Shown here: positions 46,110 to 64,000 of the stretch, piece by piece
Position numbering within the stretch: position 1 is the first letter of the stretch
Layout of the letters: every line of letters starts with the position of its first letter
DNA from: Basidiobolus meristosporus CBS 931.73
Taxonomy: Eukaryota > Fungi > Basidiobolomycota
Length of the DNA stretch: 64,000 bases
Assembly (NCBI GenBank): GCA_002104905.1
Contig: MCFE01000418.1
Coordinates: forward strand, 14,268-78,267
Direction: 5' to 3'
Notes under the pieces: model-generated
What the model was told of the DNA's origin: nothing
The model's database searches: none
What the model saw: only the letters and a program-made list of their open reading frames with translations
Program-made: the position numbers and the translations under genes

Positions 46110-49100
46110 TGTTGTAAAGATTCGTAATTCCACCTAAATATTCACCTAACTTAGTCACTTAGATCATCACCTTCAAATCCTAGAGAATACTGACCAAATT
46201 CCTTGTCGGGATTTACTTTGAATATTTTCACCAAAATACCAGGTACCCAGAACATGAAAATTTGATAAGTTGTCCAAACAGCCCCAAACTTTGCACACAT
46301 GTTCTTGGGACCTTCCTTAACCTATTCTACGTGTTTGTAATGTCAAGATCAGGTAAAAGTATAAATACTACTTTTACATTCAATATATCATTAAGTGAAA
46401 ACCACATAATCTACTTGTTCTCCCAATCACTTCCAATATCTCCAAGACTCTTACAACAGGTTATGAGCCCCAAGCTGTCACTCTCTGCAATGTCTACTAC
46501 TGCTATTACTGGAATTTTTCCCTCTGCTGAAAAGTTGGATGGATCTAACTACCAAGTGTGGAAGGTGAAGATGAAGATGCTGCTACAAGAAAGAGGCCTT
46601 TGGGATATTGTCATGGGAGAAGAATGCCCTCCTAAAAACGTGGGAGAGGAAGCCTTAAAGTACCAGAAGAAAGAACAAAGTGCCTTTAACTGCATTTGCC
46701 TTAATGTCAAGGACAAATTGCTAATTCAATGCTCAAGAGCAAAAACGGCAAAGAATGCCTGGAAGGCACTAGAAGACACCTACCAATCATGTTCAGCTGC
46801 CAAGAAAATGTATCTGAGAAGAAAATTCTTTACTACAAAGATGCTGCCAGGAGAAGAAATGAGAAATCTAATTAACAGAATTACCCTGCTGGTAGATGAG
46901 ATGGAATCTGTGGGCGTACCAACTCCTGATGAGGATGTGATAGTTACCATCCTGAATAGCCTGACAGACAAGTTTCAGGGCCTTGTATTAGCCCTAGAGT
47001 CCAGAACTGAAGATTTGACCTTAAATTACGTATATGGAAGGCTCCTGGATGAAGAATTAAGAAAATCAAGCGCCAATAAGAAGGAAGAAGAAAATGCTTT
47101 AATAAGCAATGATAACCAACAAAGGAGGTACCCAAGACCCTACAAAGGCAACAGCAACCTATTTTGCAACTACTGCAAAAGGAAAGAACACACATCAGAC
47201 TGGTGTTTCACAAAGAGAGATTATCAGCAAAAGAAGCCTGAATATGGAAATGCTGCAACAACTGAAGATAGACTATTCATATCTGCACTAAATATGACCA
47301 CAAACAAGGATTCTCAGACGTGGTATATTGACTCTGGAGCTTCTCAACACTTTACACACCAAAAAAAACTTTTTACCCAATATCATGAAATTCCAATTAA
47401 GAAGGTTTTCATGGGTGACGATAGAACACTTGATGCAGTGGGAGAAGGAACTATCCAAGTAAACCTTAGAAGCAGTGAAGGAAGCCTTACACTGACCTTT
47501 AAAGAAGTACTCTATGTACCAGAAATAGCCAAGAACCTACTCTCTGTAAGCAAGGCCACAGCAGAAGGACTCAGTTTCAGTTTTGACAATTCTGGATGCA
47601 GGATCACTGATCAAAATGGTGCTCATATTGCTTTGGGCATCAGAGATCAGAATCTATACAAGTTGACTTATATTCCATCATATCTGGAAGCCAATATAAG
47701 TAACTTAAATGAAGAAACACCAATGCTTTGGCACAGGAGATTTGGACACATCAATTTTGATTATTTGCGTAAAATGATCAAAGATCAGCTAATTTCTTGA
47801 GTGAAAATTGATCCCCCAGCTATTTTGGAGCACTGTGAAGCCTGCATATATGGGAAACAAGTCAGACAACCATTCAAGAGCTCTGGGTTAATCAAAACTA
47901 AGAAAAAATTAGATCTAATTCACTCAGATCTGTGTGGACCTATGCAAAATTTATCCTTAGGCAGGATGAAGTATTTAATCACTTTTATTGATGATTATAC
48001 AAGATACACATGGGTCTACTTCATGGAGAGAAAGGAAGAAGCTCTGTCTAAGTTCAGGGAGTTTAAAGCCATGGTGGAGAGAGAAACTGGGGAAAAAATC
48101 AAGAAAATACGCTCTGACAATGGTGGAGAATATACCTCAAAACTCTTCATCCACTTCTGCAAAATTCATGGGATAAAGCAAGAGACTACTGTACCATACT
48201 CCCCACAGCAAAATGGAGTAGCAGAACGAGCTAACAGATCAATAATTGATATGGCAAGATCTATGATCCATGATCAAAAATTATCCTATGATTTTTGGGC
48301 GGAATCAGTTGCCACTGCTGTATATCTTAAAAATAGGAGTTATAACAGAATACTTCGTGATTCTACTCCATTTGAAGCATGGTATGGATACAGACCAAGT
48401 GCAGAACATCTAAGAATATTTGGGTGTACAGCATATGCCAAAAAACTGGCCGGAAATCAGTCAAAATTTGAGCCAAAAAGTGTAAAATGCATATTTTTGG
48501 GCTACTGCAATGAGAGTAAGGCATACAGACTCTACAATACCAAAGCAAAGAAGCTGATCAAGTCCAGGGATGTGTTGTTTGATGAAAATTCAAAATTTTC
48601 ACAAAAAATGACATCAGATGATGACAAAAATTTGATCTCAAGTCCACCAATTGTCAGGATTGAATCAGAGCAAAACAATGAAAATTTTTTCACTCCAGAG
48701 GACTCTACAACCGTGGTTCAGCCAGAATCAGTGCCCAGGAATATCCCAGAAGTGATCATTCCAGTATTAAATGCCCGGAGATCCAATCGGACAAGAAATA
48801 GCCCAAATTGCTATATCAATGAGGGTACAAACTTAGCCTATGCCTATTCAGTCCATATTGATGAACCCCAGACTGTAAAAGAGGCCCTAAATAGCCCTCA
48901 GACGAAGTTTTGGAGATCTGCAATGACTGAGGAATATCAGGCCCTGATGGAAAATCAAACTTGGGACTTAGTCAAATTACCAATCAACCGAAAATCAATT
49001 GGATGCAGATGGGTCTTTAAGACAAAATACAAGGCTGATGGTACAATTGAAAGATACAAAGCAAGACTTGTAGCCAAAGGATACTCTCAAACAAAAGGAC

Positions 49101-50793
49101 TTGACTATACTGAGACCTTTGCACCGGTAGCCAAGTTTAGTTCCATCAGATTAATATTGGCTATTGCAGCCAAATATAAGTTTTTTATTCATCAAATGGA
49201 TGTAAAAACTGCATTTTTGAATGGAGAACTTGATGAGGACGTGTATATGGACCAGCCTGATGGGTTGGTTGACCAAAATAACCCCCATTTGGTCTGCAAG
49301 CTTAAAAAGCCACTATATGGTCTCAAACAATCACCAAGAGCCTGGAATTGCAAGATAGATTCTTATTTGGAATTGTTGAGTTTCAAAAGGAGTAATGCTG
49401 ACTATAGTATATACTATAAGCCAGATAGAGCAAATCCAGTTCTATTAGCTCTATATGTGGATGATCTTATTATAGCCACCAATAACCTAGAAACACTGGA
49501 AGAGACTAAATCCAGCCTATCTAAGGAGTTCAAGATGTCTGATTTAGGAGAACTTAGTTACTACTTAGGGATTAAGTTCTCCATAGACAGAAGCACCCAG
49601 ACTATTACCCTAAGCCAATCCAAGTATATTCAAGATATACTAAAGAAGTACAAAATGGAAGACTGTAAACCGACAGCTACCCCAATGGAGACAAACCTTA
49701 ACTTGGTCAAAACTCAACCAAATCAAGAGAGCTTGGTGCCATCTGAAAGCCCTGACTTTCCTTATCAATCTATGGTCGGCAGTCTGATGTATATCATGCT
49801 TGGAACACGTCCAGATATCTCATATTCAGTGGGAGTTGTCAGCCAACATAATCAGAACTATGGATCTGATCATATTGCAGCAGTTAAGCGGATTTTTAGA
49901 TACCTAAAAGGAACTGCTGATATTTGCTTAAGATACACTTATAAGGACTCAGAACAAGATCATGTGGGATACTCTGATGCAGATTGGGGACGAAATTTGG
50001 AAGACAGAAGATCCACCACAGGATACACCTTTCTTTACTGTAAAGGAGCAATTTCATGGAATTCAAGAAAGCAACCAACCGTAGCACTTTCTACTACAGA
50101 GGCAGAGTATATGGCAGCCTGTGAAGCTACAAAAGAAGCAATGTGGTTAAGAAAGCTCTTTACAGATTTAGGCCTATGTCAAAAAACGCCTATTACTTTA
50201 TTTCAAGATAATCAAGGATGTATACAATTAGGTAGAAATCCAACTTTTCATGCTAGAACCAAGCACATAGATATTAGACATCATTTCATACGTGAAGCTA
50301 TAGAGAATAACTTAGTTAGCTTAGCTTACTGTCCTACAGATGAAATGATTGCAGACATATTTACCAAACCATTAGCTAGAGACAAGTTTGAATATCTTAG
50401 GTCAAAATTAGGATTAGTCAGTATGAACATTTAGCTGAGTGGGAGTGTTGTAAAAATTTGTAATTCCACCTAAATATTCACCTAACTTAGTCACTTAGAT
50501 CATCACCTTCAAATCCTAGAGAATACTGACCAAATTCCTTGTCGGGATTTACTTTGAATATTTTCACCAAAATACCAGGTACCCAGAACATAAAAATTCT
50601 CAAAGTTGTCCAAACAGCCCAAACTTTGCACACATGTTCTTGGGACCTTCCTTAACCTATTCTACGTGTTTGTAATGCCAAGACCAGGTAAAAGTATAAA
50701 TACTACTTTTACATTCAATAAATCATTAAGTGAAAACCACATAATCTACTTGTTCTCCCAATCACTTCCAATATCTCCAAGACTCTTACAACA
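46110..50793 (+). mobile_element. Near-intact Ty1/Copia LTR retrotransposon
   Basis: LTRs 46110-46458 and 50446-50793 (TGTTGTA...TACAACA); GGTTATGAGCCC after the 5' LTR; PPT TGAGTGGGAG before the 3' LTR. No matching TSD. Confidence 0.97.
46463..50434 (+). CDS. Copia gag-pol polyprotein with one in-frame TGA at 47798-47800
   Basis: KLDGSNYQVW, CNYCKRKEHTSDWC, WYIDSGAS, LWHRRFGH, HSDLCGP, RSDNGGEY, QNGVAER, YVDDL, YSDADW and RTKHIDIRHHFIRE. Confidence 0.93.
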
Positions 50794-55130: not shown

Positions 55131-56579
55131 TTAACTAAGCCACAGGGACAACTGAGTGCAGAAACCTATGATTGTCAGAGAGTAGCCAAATTATTAGCAG
55201 AAAGATTTTGTTCAAAGCAACTCCAACATTATCTTGGAGTATTCAGCTGTTTAAGGAAACATGTTCCTATCATGTCCTCTTTGAGAGCCCCTTTAGATGC
55301 ATTACACTATAGTCCTGATCTTCCCTCAGCCTGGAACAAGGCTCATGACCAAGCATTTGAGTCACTCTGCCAGTTACTCCCACAAGTACCCACCCTATCC
55401 TACCTAGACTTTACTAAGACCTTTGTTGTTGCTACAGATGCATCTACTGTTGGGTTAGGGGCTGTCTTTTACCAGGATGACAACCAGAATCTGCCTCACT
55501 GGATCTCTTTTCAAGCCAGATCCCTATAACCTGTTGAGAGAAACTACTCTTCCACCAAGAAGGAGCTACTTGCCAGAGTCTTTGCCTTGAAGAAGTTTCA
55601 TCAGTACCTATGGGGTAACCCTTTTTCTTTGCATACTGACCACCAAGCCCTAGTCTATATCCATACTCAAAGGACTCTGACTCCAATGCTTACCAACTGG
55701 CTTGATACTCTGCTTGATTATGAATATACAGTTATTCATTGCTCAGGAATCCTCAACATCCCGCCTGACCACCTTCCAAGGGTTTTCACCTTGGGAGGGA
55801 CATGTGATTACTGATATAATCAGTAAGCTCACTGCAACTTCCAAAATAATCCCTCATTCAGATTTAAAAACTTGGAAAATCCCACATGCTAATGAAAGGA
55901 AAACATCAATACAAAGGAGTCATTTACTTGGCTGCTTTGGAGCTGACACACTTATGAAAGAGCTACATTCTGATGGATATCACTGGCCAAATATCAAAGA
56001 TGACTGCCTAGAATTTGTCAAGTCTTGCAGAGAATGTCAGCTTTACAATATCAGCCACCATGGATTTCACCATTTGAGTCCCATCCATGCAAGCCTTCCT
56101 ATGGATCATCTTGCAATTGGTTTAGCTGGACCTTTCACCACTAGTGATGATGGTAATCACTACCTCTTTGTAATTGTGGATGTCTGCACACATTTTGTCT
56201 TGCTCAAAGCTATCCCAGACAAGTATGCTGCCACTATTGCACAAGCACTATTCAAGCTCTTCTGCCTATTTGGATTCCCCAAGGTCATTCAATTGGATAA
56301 TGGGACAGAATTTGTGACTCATGTGATCAAAGCCCTTTGCCAGAATAGCACCATGGATCACTGTCTGATCACTCCCTATCATCCCAAAGCTAATGCACTT
56401 GCTGAAAGACATGTTTAGACCTCAATGAACATCATCAGGAAAGCTATCAAAGGTATCAAGAAGAATTGGGACAAGTACATTCTAACAGTACAGTATGCTA
56501 TCAACACCAAATTGCAGCTCTATATGGATCAACTCCATTTTCCTTGATGTTTGGAAGAAAATTCAACCACTTTGGAGAC
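55131..56579 (+). mobile_element. Degenerate Ty3/Gypsy pol fragment (RT end, RNase H, integrase), truncated by the telomeric array
   Basis: KQLQHYLG, VATDASTVGLGAV, HLLGCFG...HWPNIKDDC..FVKSC..CQ, DNGTEF and PYHPKANALAER. Confidence 0.88.
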
Positions 56580-57004
56580 TTAGGGGGAGAAAAGTCACCA
56601 AGTGGTGAAATCTTTATTTACTTATGACAAGTATTGAAAGAAGCCAAGCTTATCTGAAGTTATTCCTAGAAAGCTAGGTTAGGGGAGGGAAAGTCACCAA
56701 GGTAGGTGAAATCTTTATTTGATTTCAGACAAGTCTAACTACAAACAAAGAAGCCAGCTGGATTAGGGGGGAAGACAGTCACCAACAGGTGAAATCTTTA
56801 TTTTAGTTGAAACAAAGAAGCCAGCACTACTATTGTAGCTTTGATACAAGAGTGTGTAGCTGAGGGGAACTTGCAGGTAGGTTAACAACAAGTGATGATA
56901 GTGCTTCAGTGCTCAACACACTGTTGAGTGGGAAGGGGGGTAACAAGAGGGGTAAGAATGATTTGTGAACAACATTAATGAGGGGTATATGATAAGGATT
57001 GATT
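56580..57004 (-). repeat. Three 5'-truncated telomeric retro-unit 3' ends: SINE-type 56580-56678, ORF1-only-type 56679-56762, LINE-type 56763-57004
   Basis: Each begins (+ strand) TTAGGGG...AGTCACC..GGTGAAATCTTTATT and matches the 3' end of 61628-62161, 57484-58592 and 58593-61627 respectively. Confidence 0.9.
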
Positions 57005-57480
57005 TGTTGTAAGAGTCTTGGAGATGTTGGAAGTGATTGGGAGAACAAGTAGACTATGAGGTTTTCACTTAATGATTTATTGAATGTAAAAGTAGTATTT
57101 ATACTTTTACTTGGTCTTGGCATTACAAACATGTAGAATAGGTTAAGGAAGGTCCCAAGTACATGTGTGCAAAGTTTGGGGCTGTTTGGACAACTTTGAG
57201 AATTTTCATGTTCTGGGTACCTGGTATTTTGGTAAAAATATTCCAAGTAAATCCCGACAAGGAATTTGGTCAGTATTCTCTAGGATTTGAGGGTATTGAT
57301 CTAAGTGACTAAGTTAGGTGAAAATTTAGGTGGAATTACAAATTTTTACAACACTCCCACTCAGCTAAATGTTTATACTGACTAGTCCTAATTTTGACCT
57401 AAGATATTCAAACTTGTCTCTAGCTAATGGTTTGGTAAATATGTCTGCAATCATTTCATCTGTAGGACAGTAAACTAAGC
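57005..57480 (-). mobile_element. Copia 3' LTR (57005-57353) + PPT + ~125 bp of pol end, truncated
   Basis: Reverse complement of ~50320-50793. Breaks off at ~57480, where the next telomeric unit starts. Confidence 0.92.
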
Positions 57481-57483
57481 CAC

Positions 57484-58592
57484 TTAGGGGGGGGGAGGGA
57501 AAGTCACCAAAGTAGGTGAAATCTTTATTTGATTTCAGACAAGTCTAACTACAAATAAAGAAGCCAGCTGGGAATAGAAGATTCCCAAAGTAAACACTAA
57601 GTTGAATATGAATAAATCTAAGCTAAAGTTAAGGCAGTATCCCAGAGTACACTGGAGTTCAGGTTCATGGGGGAGTGAAGTAGATAAGCTTGAGAGATAT
57701 AATAATCTTTAAGGAAGTGGGTAACAGCAGGTGAAGGGGAGTTTTTGATAAGTGAAGCAAATCTTGAGAGCAGAGATTCCTCTAATGAGAAGGTCTTGTA
57801 AACTGGAGAATCAGGAAACTCTTTAAAAACATGGTCAGTAGGTTCCCAGTAAAACTGGTCAGAGACATTTTGAGAGAACTCTTTAGCAATACTTTTGTCA
57901 AGTACTATCTCCAGAGTGTGATTGTTGATAAATCTCATGTTGACAATCTTGGATAAATTGTAACCTTGTTGCTTGAGATACATCCTATGCTCAGATATAG
58001 GAATGAACTCCACATTGGCAAAGTAGCAGACAGCCCAGTCAGTAGCAGGAGGCAGATCAGAAGTAGAAGGAAACTTTCTTTTAGTCTTGGGAGGAGCAGC
58101 AGGATGTCTTGAGAAAGCAGGAACAGACTTTTTGACAGCATCAGAGTAGGAAGAGTGAGCAGGAGCAGATAATTCTTGGGGAGTCTTGTTGGCAGGAAGA
58201 GTTGGCACAGGGACAATTGATTCTTGCAGATCAGAGAAGGCAGAAAACAGCTTTTGAACTTGCTTCTTGAGTAGAGCATTTTCAGCTTCAACAAGTGCAA
58301 GCCTTTCCTCCAGGAAAGAAATCTGAAGGGAATTAGGTTAGGGTGTAGGTGTTATAGTAAGGGCTAGGAAAAGGTTAGAAGAGCAGGGGGTCTGGGGGAT
58401 GCAGTCCCCTAGAGAATAAAAAAGCAGGGGGTTTGGGGGATGCAATCCCCCATACTGCTCTTATACTCTTTAAATTCCCATTGGATTACTTTTCTCTCAT
58501 TCTTGGTTCTGGTCCCTTAGGGTTAGAATTCCTCCTCCTAACCCTTATCACCCTAACCATAAATATTTTTACCCTACAATTGGCACATTGTC
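57484..58592 (-). mobile_element. ORF1-only telomeric retro-unit, family A
   Basis: Shared 3' tail. Open frame 57618 to ~58340 (coiled coil SFLEERLALVEAENALLK, SYSDAV, WAVCYF...NSPS..V..FLK...LWDTA). No RT. No in-frame ATG seen at the frame start. Confidence 0.85.
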
Positions 58593-61500
58593 TTAGGGGG
58601 GGGGAGACAGTCACCAACAGGTGAAATCTTTATTTCAGTTGAAACAAAGAAGCCAGCGCTACTGTTGTAGCTTTGATACAAGAGTGTGTAGCTGAGGGGA
58701 ATTTGTAGGTAAGTTAATAAGAAGTGATGATAGCTCTTCAGTGCTCAAGACACTGTTCAGTGGGAAGGGGGGTAGCAAGAGAGGTAAGAATGACTTGTGA
58801 ACAACATTAATGAGGGGAATATGATAAGGATTGATATTCATCATAAATGGAGTGTGCTGCTGCAGATATTGCTGCCAAAGGTCTGTCAAGTACTTCAGGT
58901 AGGCCAGCTTGGGTTTTTCTGACTGCAGAATAAAGTGAGCAAACTTCTTGACTTCAGGATCTCCAAGTATAGTTCTCCAGCAGGAGCCAGGTGTTGTGTG
59001 GTGTGTTCTCTTCCAGGCCTTAATCAGTGGGTTGTTGCAGTTGTGAAGTCTGAGGTATAATCTGGTTCTAAGGTAGAGAAGTCTGATCTTATAGGGCATA
59101 AACCCAAAAGCACCAAGAATAGCATGTCTGTAGGGGCATTCAGGCAAATGAGGCACCAAGGAGGTAATGCACCATACTGCAAACTTGTCAAGCTTAGTGC
59201 AGTCTCTAGAAGTAAGAGAGAGAAGTGGTAAGCCAAATTCCAGGACAGGGAAGACAAACTGCTTGAGTAGAAGGAGGCAGCTGGGAGCTGAAGTTGTAGG
59301 AGGAGTAACAGCCAACAGCTTGTGGAGTGCCTGTCTTGCAAGGATAATTCTCTTCTTCAGGTGTGCTCCAGAGTCTAGTCCAGTAGGAAGGAAAGGAAAG
59401 CCAAGATATGTAGCAGAAACCTGAGCAGGTAGAGTGGAGTTCTCCAAGATGATGGGAGAGCCCAAAGGTACTGTCTTTGCAATGGAAAGCTGGAGATTAT
59501 TCTTCTGCAGATACTGGTGGATGGTCTGGGAGTCTTGTTGCACATTGGAGGAGGATATTCTGATGTCATCAGCAAAGAGAGTAACCAGGCAGTCAGCTGA
59601 GAGTCTTGGGAAGTCATTCAGGAAGATGGCAAACAGTATAGGACCAAGCACAGAGCCTTGAACCACTCCATTAGGAACTGAGAACACAGCTGATTGCTCA
59701 CTTGGGTGCAGAATTCTTGCTTGTGGATCCAGAAACAGAGACCTGATAAGGAGGGTGAGAGAGGTACTGGAGAAGCATTGCAACTTGGACCAAAGCAGAT
59801 TTCTGTCAACTGAATCAAAGGCCTTAGTAATATCAAACAGAACAGAGGGATACTTGCACTGGAGAGAGTGATCTTGGCTAAGTATGACTGCATATTCCAA
59901 GGAGAGGCCAGGAACAAAGCCAAACTGTGCAGGATGAAACTTGAGGGAGTCAGAGTAGAGCTCCTGAGCAAGCAGAAGCTCAAACACCTTTCTGCAGGTG
60001 GGCAGCAGAGATATTGGCCTGTAGGAGCTAGGATCCAAGTGCTTTCCTTTACCCTTATACAGTGGCAGAACATTTGCAAAGGACCATTCCTCAGGAGTAG
60101 AAAGCTGGGCTGAGCATTGCTGAAACAGTGGAAGCAGAAGTGCAGACATGGCCTTGGTACTAGTCTTCAGAAGCTCATAGGAGATTGTGTCCACACCTGG
60201 AGCAGTAGAGTTGGGAAGCCTCTTGAGCACATTATGGATTCTCCTTTGATCAAGTGCAATTGGGATGGGCAGAGTCTTGAAGTCAGGATGAAAGCCAGGA
60301 GTTGAGTACTGCTTTGTAGAGAAGAAGATGTTAGCCAGCTGTTCTGTTGAAGGTAACTTCCTGGAAGAGGGCCTCATTGCTCTGTAGAGTCTTGATACTG
60401 TTCTTGTTATAGAGTTGGAAGATTGCAGAGGCAAAGAACTCATAATATGATCCCAGAGCTGAGTATGCAGAGTGTGGTGAATTGCCTTGGAGTGGTGTAT
60501 TGCTGTCAGGAGGAGTTTCTCTGTTTTTGGGTTAGGGAAACTCAGGTAGCTTTGTTGCAGGGCTGAAACAATGGATTCCCATTTTCTTGAGGTAACAGCA
60601 GTAGTCTTGCATGGCAGTGAGAGGGAGGCAGACACCAGAATCAGATGCTTCACAAAGAGCCAGGCATAGTTGAGATCATCTGGCAGAGAAAGTAGCAAAC
60701 TGGCAAGCTTCAAGTAGTTCCCAAAGTCTTTCTTCTGATTCTTGGTAGCTTTGTGGGTGAGCACAGTAAGTTTTGGCAGCTTCTTCTTCACAGCTGGTTG
60801 CATAGAAAGGGACCAGGCTGGGTGGTCAGAGGCTCTCAAGGATCCTAGCTCAGCTCCAGAGAATTGCTTCACTTCATTCACAAAATAGAGGGCAGCAGCA
60901 GAAGGGCAGATCCAGTCAACACATCTTTTCTCAGATTGAGCACCCAGTGCTAGCAGATGGCTTTCTCTCAGGAAGTTCAGTAGGAATGTAGACCTTGGCT
61001 TCATTCTTGCAGTCAGAGTAGTCTTGTTCTCAGGATGGGGAATGTTGAGATCTCCAAGCAAGATAACAGGTGTTGATATAGATTGCTGGTATTGCTGAAC
61101 TTTCTGGCAGATAACTTGCACTTCCTGAAGGGCAAGACTTGGAGGCAGATAGCAGAGCACCAGACTGATAGTTGGCAACTGGAGAGCAGCACAGTAAGGG
61201 GAGTAAAGAGGAACACAGAGCTGAGGAGTATTGATGGTAGAAGAGATGAAGCAGATGGAGGAGGTATTCTTTGTTCTAGGAGTAGAAAAGTAATATAGAT
61301 TAGTCAAAAGTATAGAGGGTAGCTGGACATCAATCAAACACAGGAGGGAAAATCTTGAAAGAAGTCTCTCTAGAGTTGGTCTTGATGGCTGTATGCTGTT
61401 GCAGTTAAGCAACAGAACTTCAGGTAGTCAGGCAGAGGTTGTAGCTTCTTCAGAGGCAGCATTGACAATGTGACCTGCAGAGTCCCAGAGCTCTTCAAAT

Positions 61501-61627
61501 GGTGCATCACTTAAGTCAGCAAGGAGGGAAATGGCATGATTCTTGAGGAAGTATGCCACATCATAGGAGGGGGCTTGTCTCTTGATGGCAGCAAAGAAAG
61601 ACAGAATGGCAACATGGGCTGGAGGCA
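58593..61627 (-). mobile_element. Telomeric non-LTR retrotransposon (APE-RT LINE), 5'-truncated within ORF1
   Basis: ORF1 C-terminal remnant 61428-61627, then in-frame TGA, then ORF2, a ~65-nt 3' UTR with AATAAA and the shared stem-loop/C-rich tail. No poly(A). Confidence 0.93.
58659..61427 (-). CDS. LINE ORF2: AP endonuclease + reverse transcriptase (~920 aa, uninterrupted)
   Basis: APE: LLLNCNS, CYLPP, ILLGDLN, VDWI, SDH. RT: APGVDTI, W....V.P.YKGKG...YRPISLL, QFGF, FDITKAFDSV, GVVQGSVLGPILF, FADD, YLG. Confidence 0.95.
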   Translation of the reverse strand, partial: LPEVLLLNCNSIQPSRPTLERLLSRFSLLCLIDVQLPSILLTNLYYFSTPRTKNTSSICFISSTINTPQLCVPLYSPYCAALQLPTISLVLCYLPPSLALQEVQVICQKVQQYQQSISTPVILLGDLNIPHPENKTTLTARMKPRSTFLLNFLRESHLLALGAQSEKRCVDWICPSAAALYFVNEVKQFSGAELGSLRASDHPAWSLSMQPAVKKKLPKLTVLTHKATKNQKKDFGNYLKLASLLLSLPDDLNYAWLFVKHLILVSASLSLPCKTTAVTSRKWESIVSALQQSYLSFPNPKTEKLLLTAIHHSKAIHHTLHTQLWDHIMSSLPLQSSNSITRTVSRLYRAMRPSSRKLPSTEQLANIFFSTKQYSTPGFHPDFKTLPIPIALDQRRIHNVLKRLPNSTAPGVDTISYELLKTSTKAMSALLLPLFQQCSAQLSTPEEWSFANVLPLYKGKGKHLDPSSYRPISLLPTCRKVFELLLAQELYSDSLKFHPAQFGFVPGLSLEYAVILSQDHSLQCKYPSVLFDITKAFDSVDRNLLWSKLQCFSSTSLTLLIRSLFLDPQARILHPSEQSAVFSVPNGVVQGSVLGPILFAIFLNDFPRLSADCLVTLFADDIRISSSNVQQDSQTIHQYLQKNNLQLSIAKTVPLGSPIILENSTLPAQVSATYLGFPFLPTGLDSGAHLKKRIILARQALHKLLAVTPPTTSAPSCLLLLKQFVFPVLEFGLPLLSLTSRDCTKLDKFAVWCITSLVPHLPECPYRHAILGAFGFMPYKIRLLYLRTRLYLRLHNCNNPLIKAWKRTHHTTPGSCWRTILGDPEVKKFAHFILQSEKPKLAYLKYLTDLWQQYLQQHTPFMMNINPYHIPLINVVHKSFLPLLLPPFPLNSVLSTEELSSLLINLPTNSPQLHTLVSKLQQ

Positions 61628-62161
61628 GGGTTAGGGTTAGGGGGAGGAAAGTCACCAAGTGGTGAAATCTTTATTTACTTATGACAAGTATCCAAAGAAG
61701 CCATGTTAATCTGAAGTAATTCCTAGAAAGCTAGGTCTGAGAGATATCTTCCTGGTAAGCCAGGTCTGAGAGTTGAGAAGCTGAGTGGTACTATATTTCC
61801 TAGTTAGCTAGGTCTGAGAGAGGTTTCCTGGAAAGCCAGGCCTGAGAAGTGAGAATCTGAGTACATCTGAGGTGAGTTGTACTGATTTGCGGTAGCTTGT
61901 TTGTGGCCAGAATGGCCAGTAGACTGGGGGAACTGAGGGGTATTTCTGGGCGATCACTGGCCATATTTACTAGGCAAATCTGACCAATTAGCATTTCAAG
62001 GATTTCAGCCAATCAGAGCCTTTACTTTGCCCAATGGTTGATCAAGCCATCTCCCAATGAGCACACATCAATTTATTGATCAAGTTTTGTTGGATCCAGG
62101 ATTTGAACCCACAACCATGGGTATGGAAGGGTTAGGGATAACCACAAGGCTAAGTGTTCTT
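61628..62161 (-). mobile_element. tRNA-type SINE-like telomeric unit, copy 1 (~540 bp)
   Basis: Minus strand: A-box-like TAGCCTTGTGG (62152-62142), B-box GGTTCAAATCC (62109-62099), non-coding body and the shared LINE-type 3' tail. Confidence 0.8.
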
Positions 62162-62701
62162 GGTTAGGGGGAGAGGGTTAGGGGAGGAAAGTCACCAAGT
62201 GGTGAAATCTTTATTTACTTATGACAAGTATCTAAAGAAGCCAAGTTAATCTGAAGTAATTCCTAGAAAGCTAGGTCTGAGAGATATCTTCCTGGTAAGC
62301 CAGGTCTGAGAGTTGAGAAGCTGAGTGGTACTATATTTCCTAGTTAGCTAGGTCTGAGAGAGGTTTCCTGGAAAGCCAGGCCTGAGAAGTGAGAATCTGA
62401 ATATATCTGAGCTAAGTTATACTGGTTTGCGGTAGCTGAATTGTGGCCGGAATGGCCAGTAGACTGGGGGAACTGAGATGAAATTCTGGGCGATCACTGG
62501 CCATATTTACTAGGCAAATCTGGCCAATTAGCATTTCAAGGATTTCAGCCAATCAGAGCCTTTACTTTGCCCGATGGTTGATCAAGCCATCTCCCAATGA
62601 GCACACATCAATTTATTAATCAAATTTTGTTGGATCCAGGATTTGAACCCACAACCATGGGTATGAAAGGGTTAGGGATAACCACAAGGCTAAGTGTTCT
62701 T
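62162..62701 (-). mobile_element. tRNA-type SINE-like telomeric unit, copy 2
   Basis: Near-identical to copy 1 at exactly 540-bp offset (B-box 62649-62639). Confidence 0.8.
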
Positions 62702-63775
62702 GGTTAGGGGGGATGATAATCACCACAGGGTGAAATCTTTATTTAAATTGTAAATAAAGAAGCCAAGTTTGAATATGAATATCTGAGATAAAGTAAGCCT
62801 ACAAGATAAACTTGGACTTTGCTGTATCCCAGATATCCTCAATATCAAAGTTTAGAGGAGAATGTAGCAAAACTGCTTGTTCACTGTAGTATTTCTTGAG
62901 GAAGTTTGTGACTTGAAGGGAAGGAGAGTTTTTCAACAAGCTGGTAAACCTTTTGAGGAGTTCTTTTTCCAGAGAGAATGGTACAAAGAGTGGAATGTCT
63001 AAATGATGTCTGAATAAATGCTCTGAGAGCTCCCAATCCAGCATATTTTTGACTTCCTCTGTAAAATCTTCCACAATATCTTTGTCAAGAATGACTTCCA
63101 AGAGATCCCTGGCAATGTACTGAATGTTAATAATCTTGGGCATATGAATACCTAGGTCCTTGAGGTAGTTTCTTTGTTCTGAAATTGGAAGATAGCCAGC
63201 ATTTCTGAAATAGCAAACAGCCCAATTGGCAGTGGGAGGAGTATCAGGGCTGACAGGAAATCTTCTTCTGGCTTTAGGGTGCACTGGCTTAGGTGGCTGT
63301 CTTATTGGGAGAACAGTGGACTTTGGATGAGCTTGAAGTGCTTGGGAGTATGTCTGAGTATGAATGGCAGGAGTTGCTGGTTGCTGACAGTGTTCAGATT
63401 GACTGGAAGAAGTGCTGGTTGAGGGGTTGCAAGGTAAGGAAGTAGCTGAAAGAGAAGTAGAGAGTGCTGGGTGAAGTTCAGAGAGAGTTTTGAAAAGAAC
63501 CTGGATCTGAGATTTCAACATTGAGTTTTCAGCTTCAAGAAGAGAAACTCTTTGTTCAAGGTAAGAAGTCTGTAAAGAGTGAAAGTTGGGTAAAGACATG
63601 GAAGAAGTAGATAATAAGAAGAAAAGAGTAGTTGGGGTGGGAGGGAGGGAAAATAGTTAAGAAGAAAAGAGAGGAAAGATCTGAAATTGAAAATCTCAGA
63701 ATTTATAGATGGATGGACAAGGGTAAAGGATAGATTAATCCAGGGTTAGGGAAAAATAGTTAAGAAGAAAAGAGA
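62702..63775 (-). mobile_element. ORF1-only telomeric retro-unit, family B, directly capped by the telomere
   Basis: Shared 3' tail variant (ATAATCACC-ACAG-GGTGAAATCTTTATT), one ORF, purine-rich 5' region. Confidence 0.87.
62799..63599 (-). CDS. ORF1/Gag-like protein (266 aa)
   Basis: Intact ATG-to-stop ORF. N-terminal coiled coil, TYSQAL, WAVCYFRN...KIINIQYI...NSPSLQVTNFLK...IWDTA. Homologous to 57618-58340 and to the LINE ORF1 tail. Confidence 0.85.
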   Translation of the reverse strand: MSLPNFHSLQTSYLEQRVSLLEAENSMLKSQIQVLFKTLSELHPALSTSLSATSLPCNPSTSTSSSQSEHCQQPATPAIHTQTYSQALQAHPKSTVLPIRQPPKPVHPKARRRFPVSPDTPPTANWAVCYFRNAGYLPISEQRNYLKDLGIHMPKIINIQYIARDLLEVILDKDIVEDFTEEVKNMLDWELSEHLFRHHLDIPLFVPFSLEKELLKRFTSLLKNSPSLQVTNFLKKYYSEQAVLLHSPLNFDIEDIWDTAKSKFIL

Positions 63776-64000
63776 GGGTTAGGGTTAGGGTTAGGGTTAG
63801 GGTTAGGGTTAGGGTTAGGGTTAGGGTTAGTAGGGTTAGGGTTAGGGTTAGGGTTAGGGTTAGGGTTAGGGTTAGGGTTAGGGTTAGGGTTAGGGTTAGG
63901 GTTAGGGTTAGGGTTAGGGTTAGGGTTAGGGTTAGGGTTAGGGTTAGGGTTAGGGTTAGGGTTAGGGTTAGGGTTAGGGTTAGGGTTAGGGTTAGGGTTA
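63776..64000 (+). repeat. Telomeric (TTAGGG)n tract
   Basis: About 37 repeats running to the window end, with one variant (gggttagtagggttagg) near 63830. The G-rich strand points to the end, as expected for a right chromosome end. Confidence 0.99.

What the first reader, a model, noticed from the sequence alone, without database searches (positions are those of the whole stretch)
56580..64000. Telomeric retroelement consortium: one LINE, two ORF1-only families and a SINE stacked head-to-tail under a TTAGGG telomere
Seen: at least 8 units (starting 56580, 56679, 56763, 57484, 58593, 61628, 62162, 62702), all on the minus strand with 5' ends facing the telomere. They belong to four sequence types that share only a 3' signature and are joined via TTAG(G)n G-runs with no poly(A) and no TSD. 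Known: Drosophila HeT-A (Gag-only)/TART/TAHRE, Bombyx TRAS/SART, Magnaporthe MoTeR1/2 and rotifer Athena/Terminons are telomere-restricted retroelements with this polarity. Inference: a division-of-labour system in which one APE-RT mobilises ORF1-only helpers and a Pol III SINE to chromosome ends, alongside telomerase-type repeats. I know of no description of this combination in an early-diverging fungus.
Basis: partly seen in the sequence, partly recalled or inferred. Interest (0 to 1): 0.95.

Follow-up and report, generated by a model that had tools for sequence, protein, structure and literature searches.

The report
Telomere-only retroelement community in Basidiobolus
The last 7 kb of this fungal chromosome is a one-way stack of jumping genes (a LINE, two protein-coding LINE relatives without an enzyme gene, and a short non-coding rider). 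All end in the same folded RNA tail plus a telomere-like C-run-TAA, occur only at chromosome ends and sit under a normal TTAGGG telomere, a mix I found described for no fungus.

Summary
Eight minus-strand units sit at the stated coordinates, each ending in an identical 15-mer, under a (TTAGGG)38 contig end.

What it is: a telomere-restricted non-LTR community in a Basidiobolus-lineage fungus.
- A 5'-truncated LINE, with an ORF1 tail, one in-frame UGA, then an APE-fold domain and RT.
- Two ORF1-only lineages under purifying selection (dN/dS about 0.2).
- A roughly 530-nt non-coding element with Pol III-like boxes.
- Three short 3' stubs.

All share a 65-85-nt 3' module: two hairpins, a C(3-10) run and TAA. 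There is no poly(A).

Genome-wide:
- About 2,100 tails lie near contig ends with their 5' ends pointing outward.
- Truncation points and neighbours differ from end to end.
- Interstitial telomere tracts are at most 19 nt.
- Junctions show microhomology.
- Two elements here cap truncated LTR retrotransposons.
- A TERT gene is present.
- Diverged relatives in other samples keep the tail and the CCCTAA junctions.

Best reading: reverse transcription is primed on the telomeric G-strand through the tail, and elements sharing the tail are mobilised in trans. Whether the primer is an APE nick or an eroded end is unresolved. "Helper" roles are untested, and the genome holds at least two LINE lineages.

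This scan had already found and followed up the same system on other pieces of this genome. I found no paper describing it.

The parts
55702..56579 (+). Truncated LTR-retrotransposon integrase (flank, not a member). It is cut off at 56580, where the first tail begins.
   Evidence: Pfam rve 2.2e-12 and Integrase_H2C2 3.4e-8. The junction reads ...GGAGAC|TTAGGGGG.
56580..56679 (-). SINE-like element, 3' stub of about 96 nt, capping the truncated integrase.
   Evidence: 93.8% identical to SINE positions 427-522. Signature at 56604.
56679..56763 (-). ORF1-B element, 3' stub of about 80 nt.
   Evidence: 97.5% identical to ORF1-B positions 1023-1102.
56763..57005 (-). LINE 3' fragment of 244 nt.
   Evidence: 92.2% identical to positions 4078-4319 of the LINE copy in L043.
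57006..57483 (-). Copia-type LTR-retrotransposon 3' fragment lying inside the array. Its 5' side is truncated and capped by the ORF1-B tail at 57484.
   Evidence: The minus-strand translation ends ...[20 protein letters not shown]...*. Calling this a copia-type Pol C-terminus rests on general knowledge and was not scanned against Pfam. The junction reads C9-TAA|GTGGCTTAG.
57484..58593 (-). ORF1-only element type B, 1,110 nt. The open frame 57621-58337 is 239 aa here and is interrupted by one TAA. Most genomic copies have about 271 aa open.
   Evidence: dN/dS is 0.24-0.33 against three other copies and 0.98 against a gapped one.
58593..61628 (-). 5'-truncated LINE of 3,037 nt: ORF1 tail 61431-61628, in-frame TGA 61428-61430, ORF2 58659-61427 (APE fold then RT with FADD), and the 3' module 58593-58657.
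   Evidence: 98.9% identical to the copy in L043. RVT_1 1.2e-25. APE model and Foldseek result. UGA context.
61628..62162 (-). SINE-like element, full-length copy 1, about 530 nt, non-coding.
   Evidence: 95.8% identical to copy 2. A-box- and B-box-like motifs are read directly from the sequence. No tRNA by ARAGORN or Rfam.
62162..62702 (-). SINE-like element, full-length copy 2, plus a 13-nt extra tail stub at 62164-62176.
   Evidence: At least 407 first-look candidates genome-wide.
62702..63775 (-). ORF1-only element type A, 1,074 nt, full length. ORF 62799-63599 is 266 aa: coiled coil, RRM-like domain and helical C-terminal domain.
   Evidence: dN/dS 0.18-0.25.
63775..64000 (+). Terminal telomere, (TTAGGG)38, at the contig end.
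   Evidence: TRF period 6, 38.2 copies, 97% matches. Contig length 78,267.
58593..58657 (-). Example of the shared 3' module: hairpin 1 (UCUUUGUUU.../...AAAUAAAGA), hairpin 2 (UCACC N4 GGUGA), a pyrimidine linker, a C-run and UAA.
   Evidence: MFE -15.8 kcal/mol, z -4.0. The same architecture is found in all 8 family representatives folded.

Best explanation
This is a community of telomere-specialised non-LTR retroelements. The autonomous member is a LINE whose ORF1 (zinc knuckle, coiled coil, RRM-like domain) is followed in the same frame, after a single UGA, by an ORF2 with an APE-fold endonuclease and an RT.

The LINE, two ORF1-only lineages and a non-coding SINE-like element all end in one conserved 3' RNA module: two hairpins, a pyrimidine linker, a C-run and UAA, often followed by CCCUAA-register bases.

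Inferred mechanism:
1. The RT binds this module, in cis on its own RNA and in trans on the riders.
2. The C(n)UAA(CCC...) tail lies against the 3' end of the telomeric G-strand, or any exposed 3' end, using a few bases of microhomology.
3. That 3'-OH primes reverse transcription.
4. Each new copy is therefore laid down distal to the previous one, with its 5' end facing outward and often truncated.
5. Telomerase, which the genome encodes, re-caps the new end with TTAGGG.

Repetition builds head-to-tail stacks at hundreds of ends.

Shown: the anatomy, the distribution, the polarity, the junction statistics, the protein folds and the conservation in relatives. Inferred: recognition of the tail by the RT, trans-mobilisation, and the source of the priming 3'-OH (an APE nick at the base of the telomere tract, or an eroded or uncapped natural end).
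For: Distribution and polarity:
- The signature occurs 2,121 times (1,889 forward, 232 reverse, up to 1 mismatch) against 13 for the reversed control.
- Telomere 30-mers show the same strand bias, 7,145 against 73.
- In contigs of known length, every hit lies in the terminal 8-25 kb. C1: 5 of 5 in the last 22 kb of 345 kb. C2: 10 of 10 in the last 10.4 kb of 264 kb. C3: 2 of 2. C80: 3 of 3 at the left end on the opposite strand.
- All 11 plus-strand ORF1-A matches and both plus-strand SINE matches lie within 10 kb of a contig's left end. Contig C479 carries arrays at both ends with opposite strands.
- No family member lies in window 1-56,500 or in 40 kb of interior loci.

Independence of copies:
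- LINE copies are truncated at many different points.
- Some are capped directly by 150-240-nt terminal tracts.
- The order of neighbours differs between ends.
- Read-derived contigs show well over 100 different joints.

Recent activity and selection:
- The 50 scored LINE ORF2 matches are 98-100% identical, and 45 have no stop.
- The ORF1-only lineages have dN/dS of 0.18-0.33.

Tail:
- All 8 representatives fold into the same two hairpins, with z from -2.3 to -4.4.
- The stems are invariant, and the distal pair of hairpin 1 covaries (AU, GC, CG, GU).

Junctions (61 distinct):
- C-run of 3-10 bases.
- 56 carry TAA.
- 0-19 telomere-register bases follow.
- TAA is not part of the proximal element's own sequence.
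- Microhomology of at least 2 nt in 9 of 22, p about 6e-5.
- 26 of 61 internal junctions end exactly at TAA, against 1 of 8 terminal ones.

Enzymes:
- RVT_1 1.2e-25.
- The APE model has pTM 0.73, and Foldseek gives 1e-9 to 1e-8 against TRAS1 EN, ExoIII, APE1 and L1 EN.
- D-x-N, S-D-H, Y-x-P-P and N-x-N are kept across lineages 44-55% identical.

Conservation:
- LINEs 48-80% identical in ORF2 from other samples keep the tail, the C-run, the CCCTAA junctions, head-to-tail neighbours and the in-frame UGA.

Telomerase:
- PF12009 scores over its cut-off, and a T-motif FYITE is present.
Against: - No RNA data exist for this organism in the runs served. Transcripts, their 3' ends and Pol III use are therefore unseen.
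- Trans-mobilisation is inferred from tail sharing only.
- The tail linkers of the SINE (ACTTTCCT) and ORF1-B (ACTTTCCCT) match the second LINE lineage (ACTTTCCCT) better than the LINE in this window (ACTGTCT). The partner may not be the LINE seen here.
- No element is ever found distal to a full-length telomere tract. Simple pairing with normal G-overhangs does not predict this.
- After TAA-only junctions the next base is G in 15 of 22 (p about 2e-5). A CCCUAA tail cannot pair with the complementary primer C, so this is unexplained.
- The metal-binding Glu of APE enzymes is Asp in this family, and the domain is too diverged for phmmer or Pfam cut-offs. Nicking activity is therefore not assured.
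- One plus-strand LINE copy at C781:56471 could not be checked against the polarity rule.
Confidence: 0.7

Rival explanations
1. Endonuclease-directed, site-specific insertion of the TRAS/SART type. The APE nicks the G-strand at or next to the first TTAGGG repeat at the base of the tract. The tail pairs there, and the displaced telomere tract stays distal to the new copy.
For: - The APE fold and catalytic motifs are conserved across diverged lineages.
- The long tract is always distal, while junction tracts are 0-19 nt.
- The non-random base next to TAA-only junctions could reflect a nick-site preference.
Against: - Nothing known would confine nicking to the tract base. Nicks anywhere in a roughly 200-nt tract would leave long interstitial tracts, and none is seen among 61 junctions.
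- The junctions onto truncated integrase and copia sequence, at 56580 and 57484, carry no telomere bases beyond TAA.
- Glu to Asp at the metal site.
- Drosophila TART and TAHRE also keep an APE domain while adding to ends (my knowledge), so retention alone is not decisive.
Confidence: 0.35
2. Endonuclease-independent end healing, as with HeT-A or Athena. Elements are added only to eroded, broken or uncapped ends, whose 3' overhang primes on the tail by microhomology. Telomerase then caps the new end.
For: - Two units here cap truncated LTR retrotransposons with only TAA between them.
- 22 of 61 junctions have no telomere bases beyond TAA.
- Microhomology is enriched.
- The proximal-most elements of arrays abut unique DNA.
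- The polarity equals that of the natural 3' overhang.
Against: - It requires about 2,000 additions to rare critically short ends in a telomerase-positive organism whose assembled tracts are 180-270 nt.
- It gives no reason for the APE motifs to stay conserved.
- The same junctions could arise from a nick at the tract base.
Confidence: 0.3
3. Template-jump concatenation. Much of each stack is made in single events, in which the RT reaches the end of one RNA and jumps to the 3' tail of another, so many junctions never were chromosome ends.
For: - Direct tail-to-5'-end joints without telomere bases, for example C9 joined to a truncated LINE in L041 and TAA joined directly to full-length or truncated elements.
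- Very short stubs of 13-120 nt stacked in series.
- Template jumping by non-LTR RTs is established for R2 (my knowledge).
Against: - 34 of the 61 junctions carry 4-19 telomere-register bases after the C-run, in variable phase. This fits intervening telomerase action or pairing better.
- Neighbouring units differ in divergence. Units here are 92-100% identical to reference copies, which suggests different ages.
Confidence: 0.15
4. The arrays are spread mainly by subtelomeric recombination or segmental duplication, or are an assembly artefact, rather than by ongoing retrotransposition.
For: - Tandem 114-125-nt LINE-tail stubs on C2 could be unequal-exchange products.
- The assembly has many roughly 20-kb, all-repeat contigs and an odd orientation bias.
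Against: - Truncation points, neighbours and junction sequences differ from end to end.
- Read-derived contigs from the source sample independently show well over 100 joints.
- Related elements with the same junction grammar occur in unrelated samples.
- There are many near-identical copies with open frames, and purifying selection acts on the ORF1-only lineages.
Confidence: 0.05

Closest known systems
TRAS and SART families of Bombyx mori (R1-clade, APE-type, telomere-repeat-specific LINEs)
   Same: - APE plus RT LINEs with ORF1.
- Confined to telomeric repeats in a fixed orientation.
- Coexist with telomerase-type repeats.
- The TRAS1 EN structure is the top Foldseek match of the APE model, E 6.7e-10, although tied with ExoIII, APE1 and L1 EN.
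   Different: - TRAS and SART end in poly(A) and sit between long TTAGG tracts (my knowledge). Here the tail is two hairpins plus C(n)TAA, and junction tracts are at most 19 nt.
- R1-clade membership was not shown. A mixed profile of this family with distant LINE homologues matches L1 EN (4e-20) better than TRAS1 EN (2e-9).
- No SINE or ORF1-only partners are known for TRAS or SART (my knowledge).
HeT-A / TART / TAHRE of Drosophila (Jockey clade)
   Same: - Head-to-tail arrays with 5' ends facing the chromosome end.
- A Gag/ORF1-only member (HeT-A) alongside RT-encoding members.
- Variable 5' truncation.
- Capping of broken, non-telomeric ends.
   Different: - Drosophila lacks telomerase and simple repeats. 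Here TERT and TTAGGG tracts are present.
- Drosophila junctions are oligo(A). Here they are C(n)TAA.
- There is a non-coding SINE-like member here.
- The host and, most likely, the LINE clade are different.
MoTeR1/2 (Pyricularia), FoTeR (Fusarium), Cnl1 (Cryptococcus): the fungal telomere-targeted non-LTR elements
   Same: - Fungal.
- Inserted at TTAGGG telomeres, with telomere-like bases at the 3' junction.
- Repeats in the 5' region.
- Head-to-tail arrays.
- A non-autonomous partner (MoTeR2).
   Different: - Those elements group with CRE/SLACS and carry a C-terminal restriction-enzyme-like endonuclease in a single ORF (PMC12857005).
- Here the endonuclease is an N-terminal APE fold, with a separate ORF1.
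Endonuclease-deficient Penelope-like elements Athena (rotifers) and Coprina (basidiomycetes)
   Same: The 3' ends carry reverse-complement telomere repeats that are thought to pair with G-overhangs. They are telomere-associated, oriented arrays (my knowledge of Gladyshev and Arkhipova 2007).
   Different: They have a Penelope-type RT and no endonuclease. Here the RT is LINE-type, best matching the L1 ORF2p structure at 1.6e-13, with a conserved APE fold.
Stringent LINE-SINE pairs such as eel UnaL2/UnaSINE1
   Same: The SINE and LINE share a conserved 3' stem-loop that the LINE RT is known to need, rather than poly(A) (my knowledge). Here a two-hairpin module is shared by all members.
   Different: Those pairs are dispersed genome-wide. 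Here all members are confined to chromosome ends and the tail ends in a telomere-like motif.
HAL1 (ORF1-only L1 derivatives of mammals)
   Same: Non-autonomous elements that keep only an ORF1 with a coiled coil and an RNA-binding domain (my knowledge).
   Different: - The ORF1-only lineages here are old paralogues, 29% identical to the LINE ORF1 and 47% to each other.
- They are under purifying selection.
- They are telomere-restricted.

Membership tests
APE-type non-LTR retrotransposon (LINE) | Reverse transcriptase domain with the catalytic xADD motif | tested here: met
   Pfam RVT_1 1.2e-25 at residues 461-673. FADD is read in the ORF2 translation. Best solved relative is human L1 ORF2p at 1.6e-13.
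APE-type non-LTR retrotransposon (LINE) | N-terminal apurinic/apyrimidinic-type endonuclease with catalytic residues | tested here: met
   - The sequence signal is weak. Exo_endo_phos_2 scores 3.8e-4, below its cut-off, and phmmer finds no PDB hit.
- The fold is clear. The model has pTM 0.73, and 240 PDB chains match at E<=1e-3, all APE/ExoIII/LINE EN.
- N-x-N, Y-x-P-P, G-D-x-N and S-D-H are conserved. The metal-binding Glu is Asp.
- Enzymatic activity was not tested.
APE-type non-LTR retrotransposon (LINE) | ORF1 upstream of ORF2, and frequent 5' truncation | tested here: met
   ORF1 is about 502 aa. There are 1,410 first-look ORF2 candidates, 218 copies reaching mid-ORF2 and 83 candidates for the ORF1 5' region.
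APE-type non-LTR retrotransposon (LINE) | Poly(A) or simple-repeat 3' tail and target-site duplications | tested here: not met
   None of the 61 junctions has poly(A). The tail is C(3-10)TAA. TSDs cannot be assessed at terminal arrays.
TRAS/SART (R1 clade) | RT and EN belong to the R1 clade | tested here: inconclusive
   No reference RT set was available. TRAS1 EN is the top Foldseek row but is tied with ExoIII, APE1 and L1 EN. The mixed profile favours L1 EN (4e-20) over TRAS1 EN (2e-9).
TRAS/SART (R1 clade) | Insertion at one defined position inside long telomere-repeat tracts, with a poly(A) 3' end | tested here: not met
   Junction tracts are 0-19 nt and there is no poly(A). 22 of 61 junctions abut non-telomeric sequence directly after TAA.
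HeT-A/TART/TAHRE-type retrotransposon telomere | Retroelements replace telomerase as the end-maintenance system | tested here: not met
   Terminal TTAGGG tracts of 180-270 nt cap the arrays. A TERT RBD scores over the Pfam cut-off and a T motif is present.
HeT-A/TART/TAHRE-type retrotransposon telomere | Head-to-tail arrays with 5' ends outward, made of Gag-only plus RT-encoding members | tested here: met
   for polarity. for the ORF1-only lineages.
MoTeR/FoTeR/Cnl1 (CRE-SLACS clade) | Single ORF with RT followed by a CCHC plus restriction-enzyme-like endonuclease | tested here: not met
   There are two ORFs with an N-terminal APE fold. No REL or CCHC family was hit in ORF2. The family definition is taken from PMC12857005.
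Penelope-like EN-deficient telomeric elements (Athena/Coprina) | Penelope-type RT without an endonuclease | tested here: not met
   The RT is LINE-type with an APE fold. Only the idea of a telomere-complementary 3' tail is shared.
tRNA-derived SINE | Non-coding, short, with its 3' tail shared with a partner LINE | tested here: met
   About 530 nt with no ORF of 100 aa or more. The last 40-55 nt match the LINE and ORF1-B tails and fold the same way.
tRNA-derived SINE | tRNA-related head with an internal Pol III promoter | tested here: inconclusive
   A-box-like TAGCCTTGTGG and B-box-like GGTTCAAATCC lie about 40 nt apart (read). ARAGORN finds no tRNA. Rfam finds no tRNA match, even at E<=10 on the head alone. 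Earlier notes call the head tRNA-Gly-like. I could not reproduce that.

The most novel reading that the evidence does not exclude
The retroelement community may be a working second arm of chromosome-end maintenance in a telomerase-positive fungus. Its members would carry a telomere-mimicking primer-binding tail, and most would carry a CCCTAACCC motif near the 5' end. They would cap eroded or broken ends, which telomerase then re-seeds. Such a partnership could be what lets this lineage keep hundreds of small linear chromosomes. It would also include the first SINE and the first HeT-A-like ORF1-only elements specialised for telomeres outside insects.
Probability: 0.25. Interest if true: 0.92.

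Novelty: new variant of a known kind. Interest (0 to 1): 0.8.

Why it matters
Telomere-specialised retrotransposons are known from a few lineages: Drosophila, silkworm, rotifers, Giardia, Chlorella and three fungal genera. They are central to ideas on how telomerase and retroelements relate.

This system adds several things:
- An APE-type, two-ORF LINE. The described fungal cases use a restriction-like endonuclease instead.
- A poly(A)-free tail that ends in a telomere-like motif behind two conserved hairpins.
- A full "ecosystem" on that tail: at least two LINE lineages, two protein-coding ORF1-only lineages under selection, and a non-coding rider.
- About 2,100 tails on an estimated 240 or more assembled chromosome ends, alongside telomerase.

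The system gives a culturable organism in which to test three questions: whether telomere targeting needs a nick or only an exposed end, how a LINE RT reads a non-poly(A) tail, and whether such elements help or harm end stability.

The junction statistics already constrain these models. TAA travels with the incoming element, microhomology is enriched, and no element sits beyond a full-length tract.

Tried and rejected
1. Internal ORF2 telomere motif as a telomerase seed. CCCTAACCC is conserved at the F-P-N-P codons in four lineages. However, 0 copies have a telomere tract fused in register there, against 218 with the intact flank. Rejected.

2. TAA as part of the target or the proximal element. 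The reference sequence upstream of the truncation points is not TAA. Rejected. TAA comes with the incoming tail.

3. tRNA identity of the SINE head. ARAGORN found nothing. Rfam found nothing at E<=1 on 8 kb, or at E<=10 on 111 nt. The only Rfam rows (mir-318, scaRNA) are chance-level.

4. RT clade assignment. No named reference set was at hand. Homologue names and the protein atlas say only "APE plus RT LINE". Left open.

5. ORF1 fold by Foldseek. No match at E<=1e-3. VIA-align gives RRM domains at Z 6-7.4, rmsd 2.0-2.5 over 63-68 residues. That is suggestive, but it lies below the level at which the tool's note warns of common arrangements.

6. More genome DNA. Contig lengths for most listed places are therefore unknown, and the distance-to-end test rests on 8 contigs of known length plus the strand/coordinate rule.

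7. RNA evidence. No RNA run holds the stretch.

8. Segmental duplication as the main cause. Rejected on the independent junctions.

9. The conserved 5' telomere motif in the relatives' 5' UTR was not found. The 5' motif seen in all four families here may therefore be lineage-specific.

Full report
OBSERVATION

The 15-mer GGTGAAATCTTTATT occurs eight times in the window. All copies are on the + strand between 56604 and 62729, against 0.31 expected by chance. Each is preceded by TTAG(G)n. The window ends in (TTAGGG)38, which is the end of a 78,267-bp contig.

BLAST against reference copies resolves the stretch, read on the minus strand from the telomere inward:
- a full-length ORF1-only element A, 62702-63775
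- two full-length non-coding elements of about 530 nt, 62162-62702 and 61628-62162
- a 5'-truncated LINE, 58593-61628
- an ORF1-only element B, 57484-58593
- a copia-type LTR-retrotransposon fragment, 57006-57483
- three 3' stubs: LINE (244 nt), ORF1-B (80 nt) and SINE (96 nt)
- a truncated integrase gene, cut at 56580

At the DNA level the four types match each other only over their last 40-85 nt. There is no poly(A) anywhere.

THE MEMBERS

The LINE
- A full-length copy seen in other loci is about 4.7 kb.
- Its 5' UTR is about 330 nt and holds two copies of a roughly 100-nt tandem repeat.
- ORF1 is about 502 aa, with a CPNC...CKC knuckle, a coiled coil and a C-terminal domain.
- A single in-frame TGA follows, then a 922-aa open frame.
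- ORF2 has RVT_1 (1.2e-25), with FADD read in the translation. Its best solved relative is human L1 ORF2p (1.6e-13).

The ORF2 N-terminus
- It is too diverged for Pfam cut-offs or phmmer.
- An AlphaFold model (pTM 0.73) nevertheless matches 240 APE/ExoIII/LINE-EN chains.
- TRAS1 EN is first at 6.7e-10 but is tied with the rest.
- N-x-N, Y-x-P-P, G-D-x-N and S-D-H are conserved across lineages 44-55% identical.
- The metal-binding Glu is Asp throughout.

ORF1-ORF2 junction
- ORF1 and ORF2 are in one frame, separated only by UGA-CU(A/C), in this LINE and in three diverged relatives.
- I read this as programmed read-through. That is an inference.

ORF1-only elements
- ORF1-A (266 aa) and ORF1-B (about 271 aa in most copies; one TAA in the copy here) are 47% identical to each other.
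- ORF1-A is 29% identical to the LINE ORF1 over the coiled coil and C-terminal domain. Both ORF1-only proteins lack the knuckle.
- The ORF1-A model shows a long N-terminal helix, a beta-alpha-beta-beta-alpha-beta domain and a helical end.
- The middle domain aligns to many RRM domains (Z 6-7.4, rmsd 2.0-2.5 A). Foldseek alone found nothing significant.
- Divergent copies give dN/dS of 0.18-0.25 for A and 0.24-0.33 for B.
- Most genomic copies have open frames. These are protein-coding lineages, not decaying deletion products.

The 530-nt element
- It has no long ORF.
- It carries box-A-like and box-B-like motifs and an internal 76-nt duplication.
- No tRNA model recognises its head.

THE SHARED 3' MODULE

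All families end in the same architecture:
- hairpin 1, with an invariant base UCUUUA/UAAAGA and a variable distal part and loop
- hairpin 2, UCACC-N4-6-GGUGA
- a pyrimidine linker
- a C-run and UAA

The same holds for a second LINE lineage found in other loci and for relatives from other samples.

Eight representatives fold to this same structure, with z from -2.3 to -4.4. In the alignment the stems are invariant, and the distal pair of hairpin 1 covaries.

The linkers group the SINE and ORF1-B with the second LINE lineage rather than with the LINE of this window.

DISTRIBUTION

- The signature occurs 2,121 times in the 89.5-Mb assembly, 1,889 forward and 232 reverse, against 13 for the reversed control.
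- Telomere 30-mers show the same bias, 7,145 against 73.
- Where contig length is known, every hit lies within 8-25 kb of an end (C1, C2, C3, and C80 reversed at its left end).
- Every plus-strand ORF1-A match (11 of 11) and every plus-strand SINE match (2 of 2) lies within 10 kb of a left contig end.
- Contig C479 has arrays at both ends on opposite strands.
- The rest of the window and 40 kb of interior loci hold no member.
- First-look candidate counts are 1,410 for LINE ORF2, 560 for ORF1-A/B and 407 for the SINE. These are lower bounds.
- 218 LINE copies reach mid-ORF2.
- There are 83 candidates for the ORF1 5' region, which shows a strong 5' truncation gradient.

INDEPENDENCE

LINE copies are cut at many different points. 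Some are capped directly by terminal tracts, and the order of neighbours differs between ends. Contigs built from the source sample's reads show well over 100 distinct joints. The arrays are not one duplicated block.

JUNCTION GRAMMAR (61 distinct junctions)

- The C-run is 3-10 bases, with a mode of 6.
- 56 junctions carry TAA.
- Only 0-19 bases in telomere register follow, while terminal tracts are 180-270 nt.
- In 22 junctions TAA is followed at once by non-telomeric sequence.
- The TAA is not present in the proximal element's own sequence at that point, so it arrives with the incoming element.
- 26 of 61 internal junctions stop exactly at TAA, against 1 of 8 terminal ones.
- Microhomology between the telomere-register bases and the proximal element is enriched: at least 1 nt in 15 of 22 and at least 2 nt in 9 of 22, p about 6e-5.
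- Full-length SINE copies are always preceded by ...TAACC, whether the neighbour is another tail or the terminal tract.
- After TAA-only junctions the next base is G in 15 of 22, although the sense strand is only 12-18% G (p about 2e-5). I cannot explain this.

In the window, two tails (56580 and 57484) sit directly on truncated LTR-retrotransposon genes. This is the pattern expected for capping of a terminal deletion.

HOST AND RELATIVES

- A pseudouridine synthase gene in the window is 67% identical to its Basidiobolus ranarum homologue and 38-48% identical to those of the other fungi listed, nearly all Mucoromycota. Earlier notes of this scan name the species as B. meristosporus. I did not verify the species.
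- TERT is present.
- ORF2 proteins 48-80% identical occur on contigs from other samples.
- Those contigs keep the tail, the C-run, the CCCTAA junctions, head-to-tail neighbours and the in-frame UGA. The design is therefore older than this genome's recent burst, in which the 50 scored copies are 98-100% identical.

MECHANISM

Best supported (0.7): target-primed reverse transcription on the telomeric G-strand. The RT recognises the two-hairpin module, the C(n)UAA(CCC...) tail lies on the primer with a few paired bases, and telomerase re-caps the new end.

Where the 3'-OH comes from is open:
- A nick by the conserved APE at the base of the tract (0.35) explains the conserved enzyme and why the long tract is always distal.
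- Addition to eroded or broken ends (0.30) explains the TAA-only junctions onto non-telomeric DNA and the microhomology.
- Template jumping (0.15) may account for runs of short stubs.
- Recombination alone is unlikely (0.05).

COMPARISON

The system works like TRAS/SART and like HeT-A/TART/TAHRE, but it fails defining tests of both:
- There is no poly(A).
- Junction tracts are tiny.
- Telomerase is present.
- R1-clade membership is not shown.

The described fungal telomere elements (MoTeR, FoTeR, Cnl1) use a restriction-like endonuclease in a single ORF (PMC12857005). That is not the case here.

The telomere-complementary tail recalls the Athena and Coprina Penelope-like elements. The shared stem-loop recalls stringent LINE-SINE pairs. 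Both comparisons are from my own knowledge.

Seven searches of the paper library found no description of this system, or of any telomere-restricted SINE.

STATUS IN THE SCAN

Other windows of this genome carry the same system. Earlier follow-up agents reached similar conclusions. Those are unchecked AI notes and I do not count them as evidence.

This report adds:
- the two-hairpin module
- the junction statistics
- selection on the ORF1-only lineages
- the conserved UGA read-through layout
- the APE fold with its Glu-to-Asp change
- capping of truncated LTR elements
- a negative test of the internal motif as a telomerase seed

Noticed in passing
G000, whole assembly: Contigs are almost all oriented with the telomere at their right end. 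The TTAGGG 30-mer occurs 7,145 times forward and 73 times reverse. Left ends of C1, C2 and C722 are unique sequence without telomere. This is probably an assembly or orientation convention, but it is unexplained.
   Followed up: partly
G000: By my estimate, about 240 contig ends bear telomeres and about 400 contigs carry arrays, in an 89.5-Mb assembly whose contig 1 is only 345 kb. Contig C479 (at least 312 kb) has oppositely oriented arrays at both ends and may be a complete small chromosome. This suggests very many small chromosomes or uncollapsed copies.
   Followed up: partly
window 61428-61430; L052, L053/L054, L058: ORF1 and ORF2 of the LINE are in the same frame, separated by a single UGA followed by CU(A/C). 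The layout is conserved in four lineages 44-63% identical in ORF2, which suggests programmed stop-codon read-through to an ORF1-ORF2 fusion.
   Followed up: partly
window 60529-60537 (GGGTTAGGG on +); L052:3011, L053:3568, L058:1867: A 1.5-repeat telomere motif lies inside ORF2 at the codons F-P-N-P and is kept at the nucleotide level in all lineages. No copy has a telomere tract fused there (0 against 218 with the intact flank).
   Followed up: yes
window 63750, 62676, 58524; L045(-):4850: Each family carries a C-strand telomere-like 8-9-mer in its 5' region. On the sense strand it lies at position 25 in ORF1-A, 26 in the SINE, 70 in ORF1-B and 243 in the LINE 5' UTR. It is not present in the 5' UTR of the relative in L054.
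   Followed up: partly
61 junctions in the window and loci L001-L049: After TAA-only junctions, the 5'-most base of the proximal element is G in 15 of 22, on a G-poor strand (p about 2e-5). Pairing with the tail does not explain this.
   Followed up: partly
L002(-):1-1515, L036(+):1114-1927, L046(-):4168-5326: A second LINE lineage, with YMDD in place of FADD and a different ORF2 C-terminus, has the same 3' module. Its tail linker (ACTTTCCCT) matches ORF1-B and nearly matches the SINE. A relative is P0005/L058.
   Followed up: partly
L048(-):1-1007, L045(-):220-1010, L027: A further telomeric family of about 1 kb has a different tail (AATAAAGCACTAGAA followed by CCCTAA repeats), telomere-like tandem repeats of about 117 nt (my count of the printed unit) at its 5' end, and no signature 15-mer.
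   Followed up: no
L012-L015 (C2:260,000-260,260): Three tandem LINE-tail stubs of 114-125 nt each, each with its own C-run and TAA. They could be repeated abortive reverse transcription, template jumps or unequal exchange.
   Followed up: no
window 46262-50434: A copia-type LTR retrotransposon with long open gag and pol frames (Retrotran_gag_2, rve, RVT_2) lies about 6 kb proximal to the array. Integrase fragments lie at 55702-56579.
   Followed up: partly
run X5 (organism B), laid on window 59354-59611 and 60270-60452: A 2022 run of another labelled organism holds two short low-depth contigs 98-99% identical to the LINE RT region. This may be the same or a sister species present in that sample.
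   Followed up: no
G000:C781:56471-59221 (+): This is the only listed LINE copy on the plus strand that is not near a left contig end. The contig length is unknown, so it may be an exception to the polarity rule.
   Followed up: no
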